DNA of 64,000 nt, taken from IMG/VR virus record IMGVR_UViG_3300032315_001715, positions 310,001 to 374,000 of that record. One strand, written 5' to 3'. The notes under the pieces are model-generated. The model was given only the letters and a program-made list of their open reading frames with translations, was not told where the DNA came from and did no database searches. The position numbers and the translations under genes were made by a program. Of this stretch, positions 1,991 through 57,256 are shown piece after piece. Numbering within the stretch: position 1 is the stretch's first letter; each line of letters opens with the position of its first letter.

Positions 1991-2386
1991 TTAATAGACC
2001 AAACAAGCAGCTTGCAGGATCCCAATGGCCATGCTGCCACCACCCAGCATCACGGCATTGGCCATGCACTCGTCCGATGCGATCTTCTTTTGCAGGTTAC
2101 CAAACACAAAGTTCAGCAGTTCCCACATGCCTAGCTGAACTACCAGGCTGATGGCGCACCAAACGAGCTTGTCCGTCCATCCGGTGCTGTGGATGATCAC
2201 GCTGCTCATGGCGATCACCATGCCCACGGCAGTGCCTAGATAGCTGATGGCCGCCGCGGTGTTGCCCTCGCGGATCAGCTTGATCTCGTCATACGGCGTG
2301 ACCAGCTTGTATGCGTAAAGTGCCAGTGCCAACATGGCAATGCTGGAAAGGAAATAAATGAGGAAATTTGGCAGTGTGCTGAGCAT
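1991..2386 (-). CDS. DUF350 family membrane protein (YjfL-like)
   Basis: Four hydrophobic segments; TPYDEIKLIREGNTAAA motif. Confidence 0.88.
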   Translation of the reverse strand: MLSTLPNFLIYFLSSIAMLALALYAYKLVTPYDEIKLIREGNTAAAISYLGTAVGMVIAMSSVIIHSTGWTDKLVWCAISLVVQLGMWELLNFVFGNLQKKIASDECMANAVMLGGGSMAIGILQAACLVY

Positions 2387-2408
2387 GATTGTCTCCTTTG
2401 TGCTCGTT

Positions 2409-2651
2409 TTATGCCCAGGTTAGCTGGGCTAGAAAAATGTACGGTCCAGTGGTCATCAACAGTTCGTCATAGGGTTTCATGCCTAGCTTTGATGAACTAA
2501 CACGCCTGATCCACCATGATCGAACGCCCGGGCCGTGGCTACGACCTATGTTAGCTCGACACCAGGTTTTCAATGCTTGCAATTCATCACGATCATCCGG
2601 ACGAAAGACCAGCACCGGCAACCCTTGATAAGTGTCCGAATAGCTTTTCAA
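2409..2651 (-). CDS. hypothetical protein (WCxxxxG small-protein type)
   Basis: 80 aa ORF in co-directional chain with overlapping stop/start. Confidence 0.6.
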   Translation of the reverse strand: MKSYSDTYQGLPVLVFRPDDRDELQALKTWCRANIGRSHGPGVRSWWIRRVSSSKLGMKPYDELLMTTGPYIFLAQLTWA

Positions 2652-2836
2652 AAGAACGGCTCTCGGCGCTGCGTCGGCAGTTTCCCGCGGAATTTACGGT
2701 CAACCCATCGGCGAAATCGTCCAAGGGTTTGACCAAAAGCACGGCTTCCCATCCACATCATACCGATCGCCATGCCAAGCAACGGCGGCATCGCTAAAAA
2801 CATCGCCATTAACAACCAATTAGTCATGGCTGTCAT
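2648..2836 (-). CDS. small hypothetical membrane protein
   Basis: N-terminal hydrophobic helix, basic tail, overlaps neighbours. Confidence 0.55.
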   Translation of the reverse strand: MTAMTNWLLMAMFLAMPPLLGMAIGMMWMGSRAFGQTLGRFRRWVDRKFRGKLPTQRREPFF

Positions 2837-3038
2837 TCCATCTGAGTATTGCTAGGGTGCGATCAAAATCACACATGGCAAAGTGCTCGGCTTGCTTTCT
2901 CAAATTTTGGTCATAAATCAGGCACAGCAACTCCGGTCGAGTCGTCTCGAGATTGCCGGCTACCTTGCTGTCGTAGACCGCATCAATTGCCCGACCTAGA
3001 TCATCATCTGACATGGCTAGCAGCCATCCATTAAGCAT
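2820..3038 (-). CDS. hypothetical protein
   Basis: TGATG coupling to ligase stop. Confidence 0.55.
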   Translation of the reverse strand: MLNGWLLAMSDDDLGRAIDAVYDSKVAGNLETTRPELLCLIYDQNLRKQAEHFAMCDFDRTLAILRWNDSHD

Positions 3039-4441
3039 CAGATCTTCTCCCCCGGTTCCCAGCCACGGAATTGCATGAACACCGGAAACCGCAGGCTCCA
3101 GCTATCGCCCTTTTGGCTCTTGGTTAGTGCATCTCCCTTGATTTCAACGATACGGCCCAAGACGGCGTTGCGATCAGCCCAGATCGCATCTCGCAGCTCT
3201 TCACTATAACCGCCGCCAACCGTTACCTCGACCAGCTTGCCTTGATCTGTGCCTCGGCAAATCAATCCGCCCAAAGTGTTGGCAAACTTGCTTTCAGGCT
3301 TGCCGGGTTCAAATCCAATCACTTCTAGATCAACGGTGATCCATGGCTTGATCTTTAGCCATGCATCGGTGCGCTTGGTTCGATATGTGGACGACGGGTC
3401 CTTGATCATCACGCCCTCATAGCCAGCCTCGATGGTCTCAGCGTTGAACTCCTTGAGGGCCTGTTGGCCTTCCTTGGTATTGAGATCAACCCTAAGCTTG
3501 GGTACCACGTAGATAGCACCGCTAGAAATCTCATCCAGTAATGGCTGGAATTCCACCAACGCTTCATGCCGTTGTGTTTGCGTAAGATTGCACTCTCCGG
3601 CAAGGAAATCCGCCATGGGTAAGCAATCAAACAGCGCGAGCTTGGCATCCTTGGTATCGGCCTTGCCCTTGCCTCGATTGAGCTGCTTCATCAGGGCCTG
3701 GAAGCTGCGGCTGGTCATCTCGCCGTCTAATACCATGCTACACTTGAGGCTAGGTAACAGCTTGGCTTGCATGGCTGCGATATGCTCAAAATTGGTGTTG
3801 ATGCGCCCTTCTCGAGTGTAGTGTGTGACCTCGTTGCGCTCCTTGTCGAGGAAGCTCAACACCCGCACACCGTCGAGCTTGATATCAATCAGCTTGGAGC
3901 CGATCATTTTCTTGGGATGGTCTTCGCCGTTCTTAGCCAACTGGCAGCTGAACTCCGGGATGATATAGGGTTCAGCTGCGGCGCCGTTTTTGCCCAAGAC
4001 CTTGTTGATGGTGCTGTCAGTGCAGCCGCATTTGAAATCCTTCAGCAAAACGCGGCGATAAAACCCGTTCCAATCCCGAACGTTGGCGGTATCAGATGCG
4101 GCACGCAATGCATCTCGAGCGGCATTGCCGCTGAGCTCACGGGTTTCTAGCTTGGCCGCGATCGCCTTGAAATCATTCCAGGTGAATGTGCTGGCTGGTT
4201 GTGGCGCATCGTCCTCATCGGTGATCAACGGGGCCTTTCGCACGCCATATGTGCGCAGCGCATCATACGCCATGAGAGCTCCTTCAAAGAACTCAATCAA
4301 TCCTGCATCCCAAGCTGCTTGGATGATGTGCTCCTTGTGACCACGAGCAGAGACCGATTCCAGCGCGTAGATTACATCGGCAGCGGTGAGCAGATTTAGC
4401 GAGGATGGATCAAAGTCGTCGTCGGAATGGGCATCGGCCAT
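3038..4441 (-). CDS. lig: ATP-dependent DNA ligase
   Basis: KLDGVR (motif I), LDGEM, EGVMIK, WLKIKP, C-terminal OB fold with SLRFPVF. Confidence 0.95.
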   Translation of the reverse strand: MADAHSDDDFDPSSLNLLTAADVIYALESVSARGHKEHIIQAAWDAGLIEFFEGALMAYDALRTYGVRKAPLITDEDDAPQPASTFTWNDFKAIAAKLETRELSGNAARDALRAASDTANVRDWNGFYRRVLLKDFKCGCTDSTINKVLGKNGAAAEPYIIPEFSCQLAKNGEDHPKKMIGSKLIDIKLDGVRVLSFLDKERNEVTHYTREGRINTNFEHIAAMQAKLLPSLKCSMVLDGEMTSRSFQALMKQLNRGKGKADTKDAKLALFDCLPMADFLAGECNLTQTQRHEALVEFQPLLDEISSGAIYVVPKLRVDLNTKEGQQALKEFNAETIEAGYEGVMIKDPSSTYRTKRTDAWLKIKPWITVDLEVIGFEPGKPESKFANTLGGLICRGTDQGKLVEVTVGGGYSEELRDAIWADRNAVLGRIVEIKGDALTKSQKGDSWSLRFPVFMQFRGWEPGEKI

Positions 4442-4466
4442 GTTATTCTCCTTGTTGCGTTGCTAG

Positions 4467-4494
4467 ATTATAGCACGGATTGCAGCATGGTCAA
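4467..4494 (-). promoter_or_regulatory. sigma70-type promoter
   Basis: TTGACC-N16-TATAAT then AAGGAG RBS of ligase. Confidence 0.8.
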
Positions 4495-4534
4495 GCGATT
4501 TAATCCTGGATGGTGCGGCACCGCATGGATCCGT

Positions 4535-4995
4535 TGGATGGATTACGCTGTGTTTGCGGTTGGCTGGGGTCATAGACCATATCTCCCCCGCGGTTAAATG
4601 GGGGAGATGTATCGTGGCTGCGTACAGGCAGTTTCCACAGACCGAATTTTCATGCTGCTTATTAAAGCGTCTGGCGGTTGTCCGGTACCAGAATCACATG
4701 CACATCTTGGATTTTTTTTAATCCAACAGCGGGGGAGCAAAGCAGGGTATTCGATCAACCTGCTTGCGCTTGATCGTTAACAACGTCAGTTAGAGCGATC
4801 CGTTTTGTCAGCCGGCTTCACCGGAGAAGATAATTTCGTGACCTCGATGCCGCCTTGATCAACTATACCGAGCTCGGGCTGGGGAGATTTATACGTTGGC
4901 ACAGCCGTGCTTCTCGGTCGCCCGCAGCGGGCATTTGTTCGCGTTCCTGACGGTAACCGTCCCTTCCGCGAGTGGATTCAGTACCACCATGTCAT
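4535..4995 (-). ncRNA. large structured ncRNA, unassigned family, copy A
   Basis: Intergenic; shares identical 11-16 nt blocks in the same order, plus covarying hairpins, with 54870-55330; ends approximate. Confidence 0.8.
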
Positions 4996-5056
4996 GTCTG
5001 CTATATGAAGTTTGTGATGTTACCGGCATTTGAGGTTTGGTTACAAATGATAAAAT

Positions 5057-5084
5057 AGAAAGCGGGCCAAAAGGCCCGCTTTCT
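5057..5084. terminator. intrinsic terminator, probably bidirectional
   Basis: AGAAAGCGGGCC-AAAA-GGCCCGCTTTCT with A/T-rich flanks. Confidence 0.8.
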
Positions 5085-11050: not shown

Positions 11051-11125
11051 GCTTTGCTGTGCTGGTGGACAGCCGGAGGCCTCTAAAACCTCGCAGTGAT
11101 GGTTCAATTCCGTCGCAGAGCACCA
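11051..11125 (+). tRNA. tRNA with CUA anticodon (amber suppressor-type), discriminator A73
   Basis: Acceptor GCTTTGC/GCAGAGC + ACCA; anticodon loop CT-CTA-AA (11083-11085); T arm GATGG-TTCAATT-CCGTC. Confidence 0.82.
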
Positions 11126-11130
11126 AGTTT

Positions 11131-11206
11131 GCTTCCATAGTTCAGTGGTCAGAACGGAGACCTCTAAATTCTCTTGTCGCAGGTTCGAATCCTGCTGGAA
11201 GCGCCA
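11131..11206 (+). tRNA. tRNA with CUA anticodon (amber suppressor-type), discriminator G73
   Basis: Acceptor GCTTCCA/TGGAAGC + GCCA; D arm GTTC/GAAC; loop CT-CTA-AA (11164-11166); T arm GCAGG-TTCGAAT-CCTGC. Confidence 0.9.
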
Positions 11207-51465: not shown

Positions 51466-52563
51466 ATGGCACACAAGTACGATATGGCCGTATTCATCGG
51501 CCGATTCCAACCATTCCATCTAGGTCACCGAGCGGTGATCGAACAGGGGCTTGAACAAGCAGACCACGTCGTGGTGCTTGTTGGCTCCGCCCGCAGCCCG
51601 CGTTGCCATCGCAATCCGTTCAGCTTTGCCGAGCGCAAGGAAATGATCCTCGGTGCATTTTCCGGTGAGGTTCGCGATCGGGTCATCGTCCTGCCACTCG
51701 AGGATGCTGCATACAATGATGCGCAGTGGGTCCTCAATGTGCAAAAGCAGGTAGAGCAGGGTGCATGGTACGCCGGTCTGGCTGGTGCTACACTAGGTAC
51801 AATTTCCGAGAAGGTCCGCGTTGCGCTCATCGGTCACAGCAAGGACGCAACCAGCTACTATCTCAAGCTGTTCCCGCAGTGGGATAACATTGAGGTGTCC
51901 AATTTCCGAGATCTCAACGGCACGCTGATCCGCAGCACGTTTTTCAGCAACATCGGACACATGTGGGTCAAGGACGCTGACGGTCACCGCGCCGGCGATC
52001 TCCCGCGTGATGCAACCATCACTGGCAACGTGCGAGAGTTCCTCGAAGGATTCATTGACACGCCAGAATACAAGCTGATCCGGGATGAAAACGAGTTCAT
52101 CCGCAAGTACCGTGCGAGCTGGGCATCAGCGCCTTACGCACCGACATTCGTTACCGTGGATGCCATCGTGGTGCAGAGTGGACATGTGCTGCTGGTGCGC
52201 CGAGGTGCCAACCCGGGCAAGGGACTGTGGGCCATGCCTGGCGGGTTCATCAACGCTGATGAACGCATCCGCAATGCCGTGATCCGCGAGCTTCGTGAGG
52301 AAACCGGCATCAAGGTGCCTGATGCGGTGCTGCGTGGTAGCATTGTTGAACAGGACGTGTTTGACGATCCCAATCGATCGGCACGTGGACGCACGATCAC
52401 GCATGCGTTCCTCATCAAGCTGCGTGACGAGACCGCGCTGCCCAAGGTCAAGGGCATGGACGATGCTGACAAGGCACGATGGGTTCCCATCAGCCAGCTC
52501 AAGCCCGAGGATTTTTTTGAAGATCACTACCATATAGTGATGTCAATGTTGGCTCGGATCTGA
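51466..52563 (+). CDS. nadM: bifunctional NMN adenylyltransferase / ADP-ribose pyrophosphatase (NadM-Nudix)
   Basis: GRFQPFHLGH, RNPFSFAER; Nudix box GGF...AVIRELREETG. Confidence 0.95.
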   Translation: MAHKYDMAVFIGRFQPFHLGHRAVIEQGLEQADHVVVLVGSARSPRCHRNPFSFAERKEMILGAFSGEVRDRVIVLPLEDAAYNDAQWVLNVQKQVEQGAWYAGLAGATLGTISEKVRVALIGHSKDATSYYLKLFPQWDNIEVSNFRDLNGTLIRSTFFSNIGHMWVKDADGHRAGDLPRDATITGNVREFLEGFIDTPEYKLIRDENEFIRKYRASWASAPYAPTFVTVDAIVVQSGHVLLVRRGANPGKGLWAMPGGFINADERIRNAVIRELREETGIKVPDAVLRGSIVEQDVFDDPNRSARGRTITHAFLIKLRDETALPKVKGMDDADKARWVPISQLKPEDFFEDHYHIVMSMLARI

Positions 52564-52566
52564 ATC

Positions 52567-52938
52567 ATGTACACCGTGCAAGAAATGCGCGACATCGTCG
52601 CCCTGTGCCGGTTCGAGGAGTGGAACATCGTGGTTCGCATGGATGGAACTCGGCCGTATCTCCAGGTACATGCACCCAATGGACGGGATGCTGAAACCGG
52701 CTTGCCCATGCCATGGACCGGTCGCAAGTGGATGCTGAGTCCCCATATGTGCAAGAACGAGATCGTCACCACGGCTTTCAAGGCGGTGATGACTGCCATG
52801 GAGCATGAGGTCCGTGAGAGCTTTCGTTATCGCGGTGTAGCGATCTTCAATCCGCACCAGGACCCGGATAAGCTCGTTGACTTTGTCAGCGATGATGCTA
52901 ATATGCAAGAGAGAACTAACGTGGCGTTTGCCGCGTAA
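52567..52938 (+). CDS. conserved phage hypothetical protein
   Basis: WTGRKWMLSPHM...AMEHEVRESF; lies between NAD genes. Confidence 0.75.
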   Translation: MYTVQEMRDIVALCRFEEWNIVVRMDGTRPYLQVHAPNGRDAETGLPMPWTGRKWMLSPHMCKNEIVTTAFKAVMTAMEHEVRESFRYRGVAIFNPHQDPDKLVDFVSDDANMQERTNVAFAA

Positions 52939-52995
52939 TCCAATACTACCCCGTGGGGATAGACCCCGCGGACAACAAAGCAAAGGAGATTTGCA

Positions 52996-54387
52996 ATGCG
53001 TTATAATCTACTGTTGGATACCGACAGCTACAAGGCAAGCCATGCCTTCCAGTATCCGCCGAACACCACCCGGGTATTCAGCTACATCGAAAGCCGAGGT
53101 GGCGAATTTGATCGCACGGTGTTCTTCGGCCTGCAGATGTACCTCAAGCAATACCTGTCCACGCCCATTACCCAGGACATGGTCGATGAGGCCGCAGAAT
53201 TCTGGGCCGCACACGGCGAGCCCTTCAATCGCGAAGGCTGGGAATACATCGTCAATGCACACGGCGGTCGCCTGCCGGTGGTGATCAAGGCCGTTCGCGA
53301 GGGTGCGGTGATCCCGACCCGCAACGTCTTGCTCACCATAGAAAACACCGATCCGCGGTGCTTCTGGCTCACCTCCTTCCTGGAAACCGCGTTGCTGCGT
53401 GCCGTTTGGTACCCGACGACGGTGGCCACGCTGAGCTGGCACGGCAAGCAGATCATTCGGTCCGCCCTGGCAACGTCCGCCGAGGACGTTGAGGGCCAGC
53501 TGCCGTTTAAGCTGCACGACTTTGGTGCCCGCGGTGTAAGCTCCCGGGAGAGCGCCGGTCTCGGTGCCGCTGCCCACCTGGTGAACTTCATGGGATCGGA
53601 CACCGTCACCGGTGTTCTCTACGCCCGGGAATTCTATGGCGCTCCCATGGCAGGGTTTTCCATCCCCGCTGCTGAACACTCGACCATCACCAGCTGGGGT
53701 CGCAGCCGTGAAGCTGACGCATATGCCAACATGCTGGCACAGTTTGGCAAGCCCGGTGCGCTGTTTGCCGTGGTCAGCGACAGCTATGACATCATGAACG
53801 CTGCGCGGGAGATCTGGGGCGGCGACCTCAAGCGGTCGGTGATGTCCAGTGGTTCCACCCTGGTGGTGCGTCCGGACAGCGGCGACCCACTGACGGTGCC
53901 GGTGGATGTCGTGGAAGCACTGGGCGAGCGGTTCGGCTACACCCTGAACTCCAAGGGGTTCCGCGTGTTGCCGAGCTGCGTGCGGGTGATCCAGGGAGAT
54001 GGCATCACCATCAACAGCCTGCCCAAGATCCTGGGCAATCTGCTCGGTTGTGGTTGGAGCGCGGACAACATGGCGTTTGGCATGGGCGGCGGGCTGTTGC
54101 AGCTGGTCAACCGCGATACGTTGAAGTTTGCCATGAAATGCTCGGCTGCCATGATCGACGGCGAATGGGTTGACGTGTTCAAGGATCCCATCACCGACGC
54201 TGGCAAGCAGAGCAAGCGGGGCCAGCTGATGCTGACCCGGGAGACCGGCAAGTGGGAGACCATGCGACTGGGCAGCGGTTTTGACTGGGCCAACAGCCTG
54301 CACACCGTGTGGCAAAATGGCGAGCTTGTGCGGGATTGGACCTTTGATGAGGTGCGTGCGGCCAGCAACGAGCCCGTGCTTGATTAA
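52996..54387 (+). CDS. nadV: nicotinamide phosphoribosyltransferase
   Basis: DTDSYKASH, LHDFGARG, IPAAEHS, VSDSYD, RPDSGDP, IQGDGI, FGMGG. Confidence 0.96.
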   Translation: MRYNLLLDTDSYKASHAFQYPPNTTRVFSYIESRGGEFDRTVFFGLQMYLKQYLSTPITQDMVDEAAEFWAAHGEPFNREGWEYIVNAHGGRLPVVIKAVREGAVIPTRNVLLTIENTDPRCFWLTSFLETALLRAVWYPTTVATLSWHGKQIIRSALATSAEDVEGQLPFKLHDFGARGVSSRESAGLGAAAHLVNFMGSDTVTGVLYAREFYGAPMAGFSIPAAEHSTITSWGRSREADAYANMLAQFGKPGALFAVVSDSYDIMNAAREIWGGDLKRSVMSSGSTLVVRPDSGDPLTVPVDVVEALGERFGYTLNSKGFRVLPSCVRVIQGDGITINSLPKILGNLLGCGWSADNMAFGMGGGLLQLVNRDTLKFAMKCSAAMIDGEWVDVFKDPITDAGKQSKRGQLMLTRETGKWETMRLGSGFDWANSLHTVWQNGELVRDWTFDEVRAASNEPVLD

Positions 54388-54453: not shown

Positions 54454-54750
54454 TTAGATATTTTCTCGAGTCGATGTTGTCACTATGTTGTGTTCTAGAT
54501 TATGTATATTTTGATCTATCCGACCCTCACGGGCCACGGGGTCATTGACCCATTCGTCAAATGCACCATCCTGCCATACGGTAAATCCAGACATGGTTAG
54601 CTGATCCTCTGATATCGTCGAGCCGCGATCAATGATTTTTCCGGTTTCTCGATATAAACTGTTGGTATGGTCTGCGATCGGCTTTGGCCATGTGTACCAC
54701 GGTGTATCAATGGTTGGCCGAGTTGCGGTGTAGATGATCTTCTCTGGCAT
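54454..54750 (-). CDS. hypothetical protein
   Basis: GGAG RBS, TAAATA at 54783-54788. Confidence 0.65.
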   Translation of the reverse strand: MPEKIIYTATRPTIDTPWYTWPKPIADHTNSLYRETGKIIDRGSTISEDQLTMSGFTVWQDGAFDEWVNDPVAREGRIDQNIHNLEHNIVTTSTRENI

Positions 54751-54869
54751 TATAAATGCTCTCCATAATATTGGCTATCAAATATTTATCCACATGGATG
54801 GATATCATTTGGTTATTTGATCGACGCACCGATGGATACCGCAACACACTCAACAACAAGATGGTGCTG

Positions 54870-55330
54870 ATATCGTGGTAATGTATCCACGTGCGGAAGG
54901 GTTGGTTTCCAACAGGAACGCGAACAAACGGATGAACCATCCATTCGACCGGGAAGCACGGCTGTGCCTATTGACATGAATCTCATCGGCCCGAGCCCGG
55001 ATATATTGACAGCAAATGGCAATCGCTGTCGCAAATCATCTTCTCCGGTGAGGCCGGACGACAAAATGGATCGCTCTATCTGGTCATGGATAACGATCAG
55101 GACCAACAAGGATTAGCGTGTTTTCCTGGTTGATTTGCCGCTGCTGGACCGTGTTGGTCCGAGATGTGCATCGTGATGCTGGTACCGGGCAACCGCCAGC
55201 GACCTAGAATGGTCTAGCATGTAACACCCTGTGGACGCTGCCTATATGCAGTTTTCGTTTACATCTCTCCCAGAATATCGGGGGAGAGTATGGTCAGTAG
55301 CCAACTACCGGCTGCAAACTGCCGTGTGAT
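54870..55330 (+). ncRNA. large structured ncRNA, unassigned family, copy B
   Basis: Intergenic between divergent genes; collinear homolog of 4535-4995 with compensatory changes; GCAA tetraloop supports + strand; ends approximate. Confidence 0.8.
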
Positions 55331-55387
55331 CGAATGACGCAGGTAAATACCACACAAACAAATATCCCATCTGCGGAGCTCCGTGCA

Positions 55388-57256
55388 ATGACTGATTTTT
55401 TCAAACCAACCAATCGACCTTCCAATCTGCATGAGACCCTGCAATACAGCAACGTTGGTCTTGCTGAAATGCGTGTTGCAGCAATGGCTGGTCCAGATGC
55501 TCCGCTGCATGTGTTCGTGGACAATACTGAACCCATGCCGGTGACGCTGGGATCAGAAACCATAACCATCATAGGTAACATCGCCGTACCCACCACGGTG
55601 AATGTTACATCCACGCCCACCGATCCCGTGCATGTGCATCTAACCGAGGTTGGATCCAGTGGGTTGCTCGACGTGGCTTATCTACCGGTTGGGCAATCTA
55701 CCTCACCATGGATCGTAGTTGGCAATGTGAACATAGCCACCACCAATGGTGGTATTGAGGTCAACAACGACACGGGTAATCCGTTGCGCATCATCGGCAA
55801 TGTCAACACCACGGTCATTAGCACGGTTTCTGTCACACAGGGAACCTCTCCTTGGGTGGTGATCGGCAACACCAACATCACCAATACACCTACCGTTGCG
55901 CTATCAAGCAACGCGGTCACGGCTACGCAGGGAACATCTCCTTGGGTGATGTCAGGCAACGTGAATGCCAGCATCACGGGCACGGTGACAACGACCGTCG
56001 TGGCAGGTGCCACGGATGCGTTTGGTAGGTTGAGGACCTCTGATGGGTTCACCCTGGGAGACTACAAGCATACATATGGAATTGATCCGAATTTCAGGGA
56101 CACCCTTATTAACGGCGGTACCGTCACCCACATACCCAACCAAGCAGCCGCAAGGCTTGCCACGAGCAACAACGTGGCCAGCCGTGCCATACACCAGACC
56201 AAGATGTACCACAACTACATGCCCGGTAAGAGCCAATTGATCGAAAGCACCATCAACTTTTACGAGGCCACGGCCAACGTGACCAAGCGCACGGGCTATT
56301 TCGACGATCTCAACGGCATCTACTTTGAGCAGACCGGTATCGGCGAGCTGGCATTTGTGATAAGGACCAACACCAGTGGCACTCCCAGCGATGTCCGACG
56401 GGTTACGCAATCCCAGTGGAACCAAAATACCTGCAACACCGCGATCGCGGGCACGTCAACCGACGGGTCTAACTACGGGGTATTTGGTACATGGAACCTG
56501 GATATCACCAAGACGCAGATATTCTGGACCGACTTCCAGTGGTTGGGCGTTGGGCGCGTGCGTTGTGGGTTCATCCACAACGGTGAGACCGTCGTAGCAC
56601 ATGAGTTCTACAACAGCAACAACCTACCAGTGGTGTACATGGCCAATCCAAATCTGCCCATTCGCTGTGAGATATTGAACACCGGTGTCACCGCAGGAGC
56701 GTTCTTTGACCAGATATGCTCCACGGTGATATCCGAGGGCGGATATTCGGAAAGTGGGATAGACTTTAGTATCAACTCTGGTACAACAGGTCAAGCAGTG
56801 ACCCTCGCCAACGGGGTGTATCCCATACTGGCCTGGAGGTTGAAGAACACGTTCAGGGGCTATCCTAACCGCGTGGTGGTTCGTCCCGGAAACATGAACA
56901 TCTATGCCGAAAACCGTCCTGCTTACTGGACGCTGATCAAGCTGGATAGCCTGAGCAACATAACCCTTGGTAGCAGCACCTGGACCAGCGCCGACGACGA
57001 CTCTGCCGTGGAATACAACCTCACCGCCACGGCATTCACCGGCGGCGACAGAATGGATGGAGGCTTACTGGGAACCACCAGCCCAGGCGGCAGGGGCACT
57101 GGTGTTGCTCCTATCAATAATCCTAGCTTGGCCAAGAAGAACTTCATCGCACAGAACCAGGATTCAACCAATAGCGAGATATATGTCCTGTGTGCCCAAG
57201 CAATTGGCGGCACGACCACGGTTTGGTGTGACGTTCAGTGGCGCGAGATCTACTAG
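55388..57256 (+). CDS. virion structural protein with VTQGTSPW-type repeats
   Basis: Repeats then conserved DAFGRLR...YMPGKSQ...DFQWLGVGRVRCGF domain; start moved to 55388 (TAAATA 55344, GGAG); ends in TAG. Confidence 0.7.
   Translation: MTDFFKPTNRPSNLHETLQYSNVGLAEMRVAAMAGPDAPLHVFVDNTEPMPVTLGSETITIIGNIAVPTTVNVTSTPTDPVHVHLTEVGSSGLLDVAYLPVGQSTSPWIVVGNVNIATTNGGIEVNNDTGNPLRIIGNVNTTVISTVSVTQGTSPWVVIGNTNITNTPTVALSSNAVTATQGTSPWVMSGNVNASITGTVTTTVVAGATDAFGRLRTSDGFTLGDYKHTYGIDPNFRDTLINGGTVTHIPNQAAARLATSNNVASRAIHQTKMYHNYMPGKSQLIESTINFYEATANVTKRTGYFDDLNGIYFEQTGIGELAFVIRTNTSGTPSDVRRVTQSQWNQNTCNTAIAGTSTDGSNYGVFGTWNLDITKTQIFWTDFQWLGVGRVRCGFIHNGETVVAHEFYNSNNLPVVYMANPNLPIRCEILNTGVTAGAFFDQICSTVISEGGYSESGIDFSINSGTTGQAVTLANGVYPILAWRLKNTFRGYPNRVVVRPGNMNIYAENRPAYWTLIKLDSLSNITLGSSTWTSADDDSAVEYNLTATAFTGGDRMDGGLLGTTSPGGRGTGVAPINNPSLAKKNFIAQNQDSTNSEIYVLCAQAIGGTTTVWCDVQWREIY

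What the first reader, a model, noticed from the sequence alone, without database searches (positions are those of the whole stretch)
54870..55330. Large structured ncRNA, copy B, between outward-facing late promoters
Seen: the second copy lies between divergent genes whose TAAATA motifs (54783-54788 minus; 55344-55349 plus) both point away from it. It interrupts no gene and has no obvious promoter of its own; copy A likewise sits just past a terminator. The GCAA tetraloop (CGG-GCAA-CCG) and G-U pairs support the stated strands. Inference: keeping two diverged copies suggests paralogs that co-assemble or specialise, or an element able to move without an adjacent protein gene.
Basis: partly seen in the sequence, partly recalled or inferred. 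Interest (0 to 1): 0.8.

Follow-up and report, generated by a model that had tools for sequence, protein, structure and literature searches.

The report
New large pseudoknotted jumbo-phage RNA family
A 470-base RNA gene, present in three diverged copies in a 453-kb freshwater phage and in about two dozen related uncultured phages, folds into an intricate, knot-rich shape that matches no catalogued RNA family, so it is a candidate new ribozyme-sized RNA whose job is still unknown.

Summary
The finding is real. Window 54853-55321 (+) encodes a ~470-nt structured RNA. It is a paralog of window 4550-5008 (-). A third copy lies outside the window, at genome 15329-15819 (-). I recovered 25 distinct homologs (60-80% identity), all from uncultured, mostly freshwater phage contigs. 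None came from 185,579 bacterial species (one motif scan), cultured phages or Rfam 15. Covariation is overwhelming. In the 5' domain 98.6% of cells are paired, against 29-39% in slid controls, and 30 of 44 pairs show compensatory changes. In the 3' domain the figure is 93.2% against 34-52%. At least five long-range pairings knot the fold. The RNA is an independent gene. Its orientation relative to neighbours varies, it has no conserved ORF, and most members carry a sigma-70-like promoter at a conserved position (degenerate in copy B). The three copies are lineage-specific duplications, each with its own compensated changes. A second jumbo-phage lineage carries two paralogs. Function is unknown. 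My best reading is a trans-acting, compactly folded RNA machine: a ribozyme or the core of an RNA-protein complex. I rejected group I/II intron, RNase P, tmRNA, omega-RNA, retron-type RNA and cis-leader. Expression is untested.

The parts
54853..55321 (+). Copy B of the RNA, whole transcript core (5' leader strand of PKa through the CA-rich tail)
   Evidence: cmsearch R1 54854-55102 (216 bits) and R2 55098-55321 (155 bits); nhmmer
54817..54847 (+). Position homologous to the family's sigma-70-like promoter (-35-like TTGATC 54817-54822, -10-like CAACAC 54842-54847); degenerate in copy B
   Evidence: Upstream sequences of 24 homologs; not called by the consensus scan
54751..54758 (+). TATAAATG on the RNA's strand about 100 nt upstream (7 of 8 match to the T4-type late promoter TATAAATA); a lead for how copy B is transcribed, not tested
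   Evidence: Sequence; the T4 late consensus is from my own knowledge
54860..54864 (+). PKa 5' strand (GAUGG), pairs with the H4 loop CCAUC at 54937-54941
   Evidence: 4 covarying pairs in the close group; same-vs-cross test 0/2000
54874..54891 (+). Hairpin H2
   Evidence: helix 1: 4 of 5 pairs compensatory, 100% paired
54893..54921 (+). H3/H3b with the invariant purine-rich 5x5 internal loop (GGAAGGG ... CAGGAAC), identical in all 25 homologs
   Evidence: helices 2 and 3
54929..54947 (+). Hairpin H4; its loop is the 3' strand of PKa
   Evidence: helix 4: 5 of 6 pairs compensatory
54949..55000 (+). H5/H5b arm with an AGYA/GAR internal loop; the 3' part of its long loop (54979-54984) is the 5' strand of PKd
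   Evidence: helices 5 and 6; PKd test 0/5000; PKd is only 4 bp in copy B
55044..55058 (+). Hairpin H7 with conserved GUGA(N)GC loop
   Evidence: helix 7
55068..55098 (+). H8/H8b arm (GGAUCGCUCU ... AACGAUC); loop 55080-55088 is the 5' strand of PKe
   Evidence: helices 8 and 9; PKe test 0/5000, 9 bp in copy B
55102..55134 (+). Hairpin H9; loop bases 55116-55121 pair with 55224-55229 (PKc)
   Evidence: H9 and PKc 0/2000; helix 1: 6 of 6 pairs compensatory
55142..55145 (+).
   Evidence: complete in 22 of 24 homologs, 10 strand combinations
55177..55201 (+). Hairpin H11 with the near-invariant loop GUACCGGGCAACC
   Evidence: helix 3
55264..55288 (+). Hairpin H14; its outer 3' strand (GGAGAG, 55283-55288) is also the 3' strand of PKd, so the two pairings exclude each other
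   Evidence: helix 4
55289..55297 (+). Segment Y (UAUGGUCAG), 3' strand of PKe
55301..55319 (+). C/A-rich, G-poor 3' tail; no intramolecular partner detected
   Evidence: scan of all windows
4550..5008 (-). Copy A of the RNA, in the locus that is syntenic in other phages (upstream of the ATP-dependent DNA ligase gene at 3038-4441)
   Evidence: synteny
5017..5046 (-). Copy A promoter-like pair: TTGTAA, 18-nt spacer, TAACAT (8 of 12)
   Evidence: below the threshold of the scan
5057..5084 (-). Intrinsic terminator of the upstream gene, before copy A
54783..54788 (-). TAAATA motif upstream of the divergent 97-aa gene
55344..55349 (+). TAAATA motif at the start of the virion structural protein gene

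Best explanation
Copy B is one of three paralogous, independently transcribed genes for a ~470-nt trans-acting RNA of a family not previously catalogued. The family is restricted, as far as sampled, to uncultured freshwater jumbo phages with T4/cyanophage-like traits. Shown: the RNA has two domains with about 17 helices. These are tied together by at least five long-range Watson-Crick pairings. (1) The 5' leader pairs with the H4 loop. (2) CUGCU pairs with the H11 loop. (3) The H9 loop pairs with segment X. (4) The H5b loop pairs with the 3' strand of H14. (5) The H8b loop pairs with segment Y. Its most invariant nucleotides lie in internal loops and junctions of the 5' domain, not in helices. 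Inferred: the continuous 3' strand GGAGAU-AUGGU docks on two loops of the 5' domain and clamps the two domains into a compact globule. This docking competes with the outer half of hairpin H14, and all three strands covary, so the RNA probably alternates between an open and a clamped state. I think it most likely acts as a pre-organised RNA machine, either a ribozyme or the RNA core of a ribonucleoprotein, made from a host-type promoter. The paralogs would be specialised through their copy-specific loops and 3' segments. The chemistry or partner is unknown.
For: Homologs and paralogs. Covariation: 37 of 88 pairs compensatory in 10 sequences; 98.6% paired against 29-39% slid, 30 of 44 pairs compensatory, 0/500 shuffles; 93.2% against 34-52%, 21 of 24 compensatory. 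Pseudoknots: (all 0 of 2000-5000 permutations, while control window pairs are not significant). Independent gene: orientation opposite to both neighbours in L064 and L067, and convergent in L062 and L079; no conserved ORF; promoter-like pairs enriched and fixed in position (mean 8.2 of 12 against 6.9; at least 9 of 12 in 33% against 7.5%). Paralogs maintained. Size, pseudoknot density and loop conservation resemble RNase P and group I/II ribozymes; that comparison rests on my own knowledge of those families.
Against: No expression data: no RNA run was listed. Copy B lacks a recognisable sigma-70 promoter. No catalytic motif, substrate or protein partner was identified. No terminator defines the 3' end. 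The single-sequence folding z-score is modest (-2.15). The open/clamped switch is inferred only from two mutually exclusive covarying pairings. The permutation tests ignore phylogeny. Alignments fitted to a model lean towards its structure.
Confidence: 0.55

Rival explanations
1. A self-assembling 'ornate' RNA like ROOL or GOLLD: the transcripts form homo- or hetero-oligomeric cages or scaffolds during infection, and the paralogs co-assemble.
For: It is phage-encoded, large, an independent gene and multi-copy. Several conserved loops contain palindromic cores (GAUC, GGUACC, CAUG). The CA-rich tail has no detected intramolecular partner and segment Y none for its 3' half. ROOL and GOLLD are phage-associated and form RNA-only multimers (bioRxiv 10.1101/2024.12.08.627333, abstract seen).
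Against: No match to the ROOL or GOLLD models, even at E<=10. It is not next to tRNA genes. Most conserved loops are already used by intramolecular pseudoknots. No oligomer test was possible.
Confidence: 0.15
2. A decoy or sponge RNA that sequesters a host factor (an RNA-binding defence protein, a nuclease or a translation factor). The rigid scaffold would display the invariant purine-rich loop and the CA-rich tail.
For: Host-type promoter, suggesting early expression. Invariant single-stranded motifs (GGAAGGG/CAGGAAC loop, CA-rich tail). Multiple copies raise dosage.
Against: A decoy rarely needs about 17 helices and five pseudoknots. The paralogs are diverged rather than identical, which argues against a simple dosage role. 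No candidate host partner was identified.
Confidence: 0.12
3. A giant cis-acting leader or riboswitch that controls the gene downstream (the ATP-dependent DNA ligase at the ancestral locus).
For: In the close clade the RNA sits upstream of the ligase gene in the same orientation in at least 8 lineages. There is no terminator between the RNA and the next gene. Two mutually exclusive covarying pairings are typical of switches.
Against: Copies B and C and the distant clade precede unrelated genes. In L064 and L067 both neighbours are on the other strand. A strong sigma-70 promoter lies between the RNA and the ligase gene (window 4467-4494, 11 of 12; seen by eye in L005, L011, L020 and L084).
Confidence: 0.05
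4. A mobile, protein-less RNA or DNA element (or a degenerate, ORF-less self-splicing intron) that copies itself to new intergenic sites.
For: Three intergenic copies in one genome. A truncated 5' remnant lies beside a full copy in L005/L006. The 5' leader pairs with an internal loop, which resembles intron exon-binding.
Against: The duplicated unit includes the promoter. No terminal repeats or target duplications were seen. The flanks are not exons of one gene. There is no group I or group II match. The 5' GUGYG of group II is not conserved. No reverse transcriptase is found in the genome. The copies are old (0.3-0.4 substitutions per site), and copy A's locus is syntenic across phages.
Confidence: 0.04

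Closest known systems
GOLLD and ROOL RNAs (Rfam families; large 'ornate' RNAs of phages and prophages)
   Same: Large (hundreds of nt), intricately folded, encoded by phages as free-standing genes, function unknown.
   Different: No match to their covariance models. Shorter (~470 nt against ~580-800). Not adjacent to tRNA genes. The fold is dominated by intramolecular loop-strand pseudoknots. Oligomerisation is untested.
Large ribozymes: RNase P RNA, group I and group II introns
   Same: Comparable size, two-domain build, several long-range Watson-Crick tertiary pairings, and invariant nucleotides concentrated in junctions and internal loops.
   Different: No Rfam match. No P4-type CR-I/CR-V pair, no domain V, no conserved GUGYG 5' end. 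No host gene is interrupted. No P3/P7 topology could be mapped.
OLE RNA and raiA motif RNA (large bacterial ncRNAs of unknown biochemistry)
   Same: A highly conserved, complex ncRNA class found by comparative genomics, with probable protein partners.
   Different: Those are bacterial chromosomal genes of Bacillota and Actinomycetota. This family is found only in phage contigs and has no sequence or model similarity.
IscB/TnpB omega-RNAs (HEARO) and reverse-transcriptase-linked ncRNAs (retron, DRT)
   Same: Structured RNAs of 200-400 nt with pseudoknots and a variable terminal segment.
   Different: No adjacent nuclease or reverse transcriptase gene. No RVT_1 and no TnpB-type domain anywhere in the 453-kb genome.

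Membership tests
Any Rfam 15 family (including GOLLD, ROOL, OLE, raiA, HEARO, RNase P, tmRNA, group I/II introns) | Match to the family covariance model | tested here: not met
   No hit at the gathering threshold in the window except one tRNA. No hit at E<=10 on 54600-55500. No hit over the RNA in 10 homolog loci at E<=10.
Group I intron | Interrupts a gene, so that the flanks form one continuous exon | tested here: not met
   Copy B lies between divergent genes. Copy A lies between a terminator and a promoter.
Group I intron | P3/P7 double-pseudoknot core with complementary R and S elements | tested here: not met
   An S-like string (GAGAUAUGGUC) exists, but its partner is the H8b loop, and the similar segment X has the same sense rather than being complementary. 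The helix order does not map to P3-P9.
Group II intron | Domain V hairpin and a GUGYG 5' end | tested here: not met
   No RF00029 or D1-D4 hit. The GUGCG in copy B is not conserved in homologs.
RNase P RNA | Conserved regions CR-I and CR-V forming P4; match to the RNase P models | tested here: not met
   No model hit. No complementary CR-I/CR-V-like pair in the alignment. The consensus sequences used for this comparison come from my own memory.
tmRNA | tRNA-like acceptor formed from the two ends, plus a tag reading frame | tested here: not met
   ARAGORN calls nothing at the three loci. The genome's tmRNA is elsewhere, at 111695-112033.
omega-RNA of IscB/TnpB | Encoded next to its nuclease gene | tested here: not met
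   The neighbours are unrelated. There is no PF07282 match in the genome.
Retron or DRT template RNA | A reverse transcriptase partner | tested here: not met
   No PF00078 match in the 453-kb genome.
Y RNA / Ro60 RNP | A TROVE-domain Ro60 protein in the genome | tested here: not met
   No PF05731 match.
Cis-regulatory leader / riboswitch | Constant position and orientation upstream of the regulated gene | tested here: not met
   The downstream genes differ. In L064 and L067 both neighbours are on the other strand.
Self-assembling ornate RNA (functional class of ROOL/GOLLD) | Formation of defined RNA-only multimers | not testable with these tools
   Needs native gels, mass photometry or cryo-EM.
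Ribozyme (functional class) | Catalysis by the RNA alone | not testable with these tools
   Needs in vitro self-processing and trans-activity assays.

The most novel reading that the evidence does not exclude
This is a new class of large ribozyme, or of conformationally switching RNA machine, encoded in several specialised copies by jumbo phages. On this reading, the invariant purine-rich loops of the 5' domain form an active site. The 3' strand toggles between the H14 hairpin and a two-loop clamp (PKd plus PKe) as part of the working cycle. The same-sense, co-varying segments X and Y are successive occupants of one recognition site.
Probability: 0.2. Interest if true: 0.92.

Novelty: new variant of a known kind. 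Interest (0 to 1): 0.72.

Why it matters
Large RNAs with this degree of folding are rare. Most of those with a known function are ribozymes or the cores of essential ribonucleoproteins, and the remaining orphans (OLE, GOLLD, ROOL, raiA) are long-standing puzzles. This adds a well-supported orphan class of about 470 nt with roughly 17 helices and at least five long-range pairings. It is encoded only by very large uncultured phages, and diverged paralogs are kept within one genome. That paralogy offers natural variants for dissecting function, a feature the other orphan classes lack to my knowledge. The family is small and well defined, with a testable secondary and tertiary map, so it suits cryo-EM and ribozyme screening directly. 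It also shows that jumbo phages carry complex RNA genes beyond tRNAs and tmRNA.

Tried and rejected
- **Rfam:** scans at gathering and permissive thresholds on the window and on ten homolog loci found nothing over the RNA.
- **Cultured phages:** blastn against 50,697 cultured phage records found nothing. The R1 model on three cultured relatives or jumbo phages (S-RIM32, S-SRM01, SCTP-2) gave only a 12.6-bit noise hit.
- **Bacterial genomes:** a motif scan of 185,579 bacterial and archaeal species returned eight chance matches and no homolog. That motif fits only the close clade, so absence of the wider family from bacteria is weakly tested.
- **Chance matches:** several scan hits (L009, L013, L019, L021, L023-25, L068, L083, L089) were discarded after profile or model scoring.
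- **Intron and RNase P mapping by eye:** all attempts failed (see membership tests).
- **Telomerase-like template:** I considered this for the CCAACCAACC tail, but the genome has no reverse transcriptase.
- **Partner for the 3' tail, the 3' half of Y and the 5' linker:** a scan of all alignment windows found nothing convincing. The RNAalifold-predicted AUAU/AUAU closing helix was not supported (281/2000).
- **Expression:** only DNA runs hold the locus, and no RNA run was listed.
- **Amber recoding:** I checked this because of the two CUA suppressor tRNAs. Treating TAG as sense does not lengthen ORFs.
- **L005 ORF:** my by-eye call of a GIY-YIG nuclease in the L005 insertion was not confirmed by Pfam. 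PHROGs gives only families of unknown function.

Full report
**What is there**

The window is bases 310001-374000 of a 452,799-bp virus record. The stretch named in the finding has a diverged reverse-strand copy in the window (70.8% identity over 438 nt, E=4e-39). A third copy lies elsewhere in the genome. A three-way alignment already shows compensatory helix changes. Rfam 15 has no match, either at curated thresholds or at E<=10 on the 900 bases around copy B. Cultured phages have no similar DNA.

**Homologs**

I scanned public viral and metagenome contigs with short invariant blocks and scored the loci with profile HMMs. This gave 27 unique sequences, or 25 after merging two near-identical pairs. 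Pairwise identity is 60-80% in the close group and lower in a second clade.

- All homologs come from phage-like contigs. The runs that hold the window's locus are labelled freshwater metagenomes.
- A scan of one genome per 185,579 prokaryote species with the close-clade motif returned only chance matches.
- Four large contigs of a second jumbo-phage lineage each hold two diverged copies about 106 kb apart.

**Secondary structure**

- RNAalifold on ten sequences predicts 88 pairs, 37 of them with compensatory changes.
- I built covariance models for the 5' and 3' halves and re-aligned all members.
- 5' domain (44 pairs, 9 helices): 98.6% of cells are standard pairs, against 29-39% when partners are slid by 1-3 columns. 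Thirty pairs show double changes, and 0 of 500 shuffles reach the observed values.
- 3' domain (24 pairs): 93.2% against 34-52%, with 21 pairs compensatory.
- These alignments are fitted to the models, which favours the structure. The gap to the controls is still very large.
- About 87 G-U cells in the 5' domain fix the strand. For copy B that is the plus strand.
- No ORF is conserved in position, strand or length.

**Tertiary pairings**

I compared the complementarity of two windows within a sequence against the same windows taken from different sequences (24 sequences, permutation test). This test ignores phylogeny, but unrelated window pairs served as negative controls and were not significant. 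Supported pairings:

- PKa: the 5' leader AAGAUGA with the H4 loop.
- PKb: CUGCU with the H11 loop.
- PKc: the H9 loop with segment X.
- Helices H9-H12, H14, H15 and H16.
- PKd: the 3' part of the H5b loop with GGAGAU.
- PKe: the H8b loop with AUGGU.

The bases read as a CGG-GCAA-CCG tetraloop hairpin form a 4-bp pseudoknot that is complete in 22 of 24 homologs with ten strand combinations. The hairpin is intact in only 11 of 24, and its changes are never compensated.

PKd and PKe lie side by side on one continuous 3' strand. That strand therefore bridges two loops of the 5' domain.

PKd uses the same purine run as the outer half of hairpin H14, and all three strands covary (for example UCUUCC/GAAGA in L071). 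The two pairings cannot coexist, which I read as a possible open/clamped switch. This is inference.

**Unexplained features**

- Segments X and Y, about 70 nt apart, vary in parallel in the same sense (shared run of 5.3 nt within a sequence against 4.1 between sequences, 0/5000).
- The C/A-rich tail has no detectable partner.

**Independent gene**

- In the close clade the RNA lies upstream of an ATP-dependent DNA ligase gene, often after a heme oxygenase and bilin reductase cassette. Copy A shares this synteny.
- Copies B and C and the distant clade have unrelated neighbours. In several loci the RNA is antisense or convergent to them.
- A sigma-70-like -35/-10 pair sits at a fixed distance upstream in most members. 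The best match averages 8.2 of 12 against 6.9 in random windows, and reaches at least 9 of 12 in 33% against 7.5%.
- Copy A has TTGTAA, an 18-nt spacer and TAACAT.
- Copy B has only a degenerate version (best 6 of 12 by scan), plus a TATAAATG about 100 nt upstream on its strand. How copy B is transcribed is open.
- No terminator follows the tail. In several loci a strong promoter for the next gene follows directly.
- No RNA-seq run could be listed, so expression is untested.

**Paralogs**

In a maximum-likelihood tree the three copies, plus one metagenomic sequence that is copy C's closest relative, form a clade with support 96/97. Terminal branches are 0.15-0.42 substitutions per site. These are old, lineage-specific duplications that selection has kept.

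Copy B's unusual Y segment is matched by an equally unusual H8b loop (9 bp). Each copy is therefore maintained as a folded RNA in its own right.

The duplicated unit includes the promoter region, and I saw no repeats at its ends. One locus pair (L005/L006) shows a truncated 5' remnant of a second copy and a 216-aa ORF insertion of unknown function. This fits recombination at a conserved sequence.

**What it is not**

See the membership tests. Group I/II intron, RNase P, tmRNA, omega-RNA, retron/DRT RNA, Y RNA and cis-leader all fail a defining feature.

**Phage background**

- The genome has 43 tRNA genes and a permuted tmRNA whose best clan match is the cyanobacterial model.
- The virion protein next to copy B is 49.7% identical to one of T4-like cyanophage S-RIM32.
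- TAAATA is concentrated just upstream of ORF starts.
- A cyanobacterial host is plausible but not shown.

**Verdict**

This is a real, strongly supported, previously uncatalogued family of large, multiply pseudoknotted phage RNAs. It is a free-standing gene kept in several diverged copies per jumbo genome. The mechanism is unknown. I favour a trans-acting RNA machine (a ribozyme or the core of a ribonucleoprotein) with a clamp-like 3' strand. Self-assembling scaffold and decoy are the main rivals.

Noticed in passing
outside the window: genome G000:C1:15329-15819 (-), locus L002/L092: Third paralog (copy C) of the RNA. It lies between an HD-domain protein with a 99-aa ORF upstream and a 391-aa ORF of unknown function downstream. 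An HNH endonuclease gene lies just beyond.
   Followed up: yes
window 11051-11206 (+): Two adjacent tRNA genes with anticodon CUA (amber suppressors; ARAGORN labels them tRNA-Pyl, and Rfam calls only the second). Treating TAG as sense does not lengthen ORFs, and TAG ends 98 of 529 long ORFs, so genome-wide recoding is not evident.
   Followed up: partly
L005:1989-2840 versus L006:4580-4700: Just upstream of the full RNA gene lies an ~90-nt remnant of the 5' end of a second, L008-like copy. L005 also carries a ~730-bp insertion encoding a 216-aa ORF on the opposite strand (phrog_15526, unknown function). Its GIY-YIG-like motif, seen by eye, was not confirmed by Pfam.
   Followed up: partly
L005:593-1432, L006:3183-4022, L011:2594-3487: In these phages the gene after the RNA matches only the N-terminal third of the ATP-dependent DNA ligase family and is followed by a separate 299-aa ORF. 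The ligase may be split or interrupted.
   Followed up: no
outside the window: genome 111695-112033 (-), locus L097: Permuted (two-piece) tmRNA gene. Rfam tmRNA_permuted scores 67.7 bits, and the best clan match is cyano_tmRNA (39.9 bits, below its threshold). This hints at a cyanobacterial host.
   Followed up: partly
window 51466-54387 (+): NAD+ salvage pair just upstream of copy B: a cytidylyltransferase-like/NUDIX fusion (NMNAT-Nudix type) and a nicotinamide phosphoribosyltransferase.
   Followed up: no
L045:2698-3853, L008:194-838 and other loci: A heme oxygenase and ferredoxin-dependent bilin reductase cassette lies upstream of the RNA in several related phages.
   Followed up: no
window-wide / whole genome: TAAATA is not over-represented overall (198 copies against 243 expected). 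However, 43% of copies lie 5-60 nt upstream of long-ORF start codons, against 8% for TTTATA. This is consistent with a T4-like late promoter core.
   Followed up: partly
L013, L019, L021 (for example L019:5640-5690): Three near-identical viral contigs carry a 25-nt string matching the H8 motif (TCGCTCTATC...GGATAACGA) but nothing else of the RNA. This is either chance or a small unrelated hairpin.
   Followed up: no
copy B 55224-55236 and 55289-55300; all homologs: Segments X and Y change in parallel, in the same sense, across the family, although they pair with different partners. No explanation found.
   Followed up: partly
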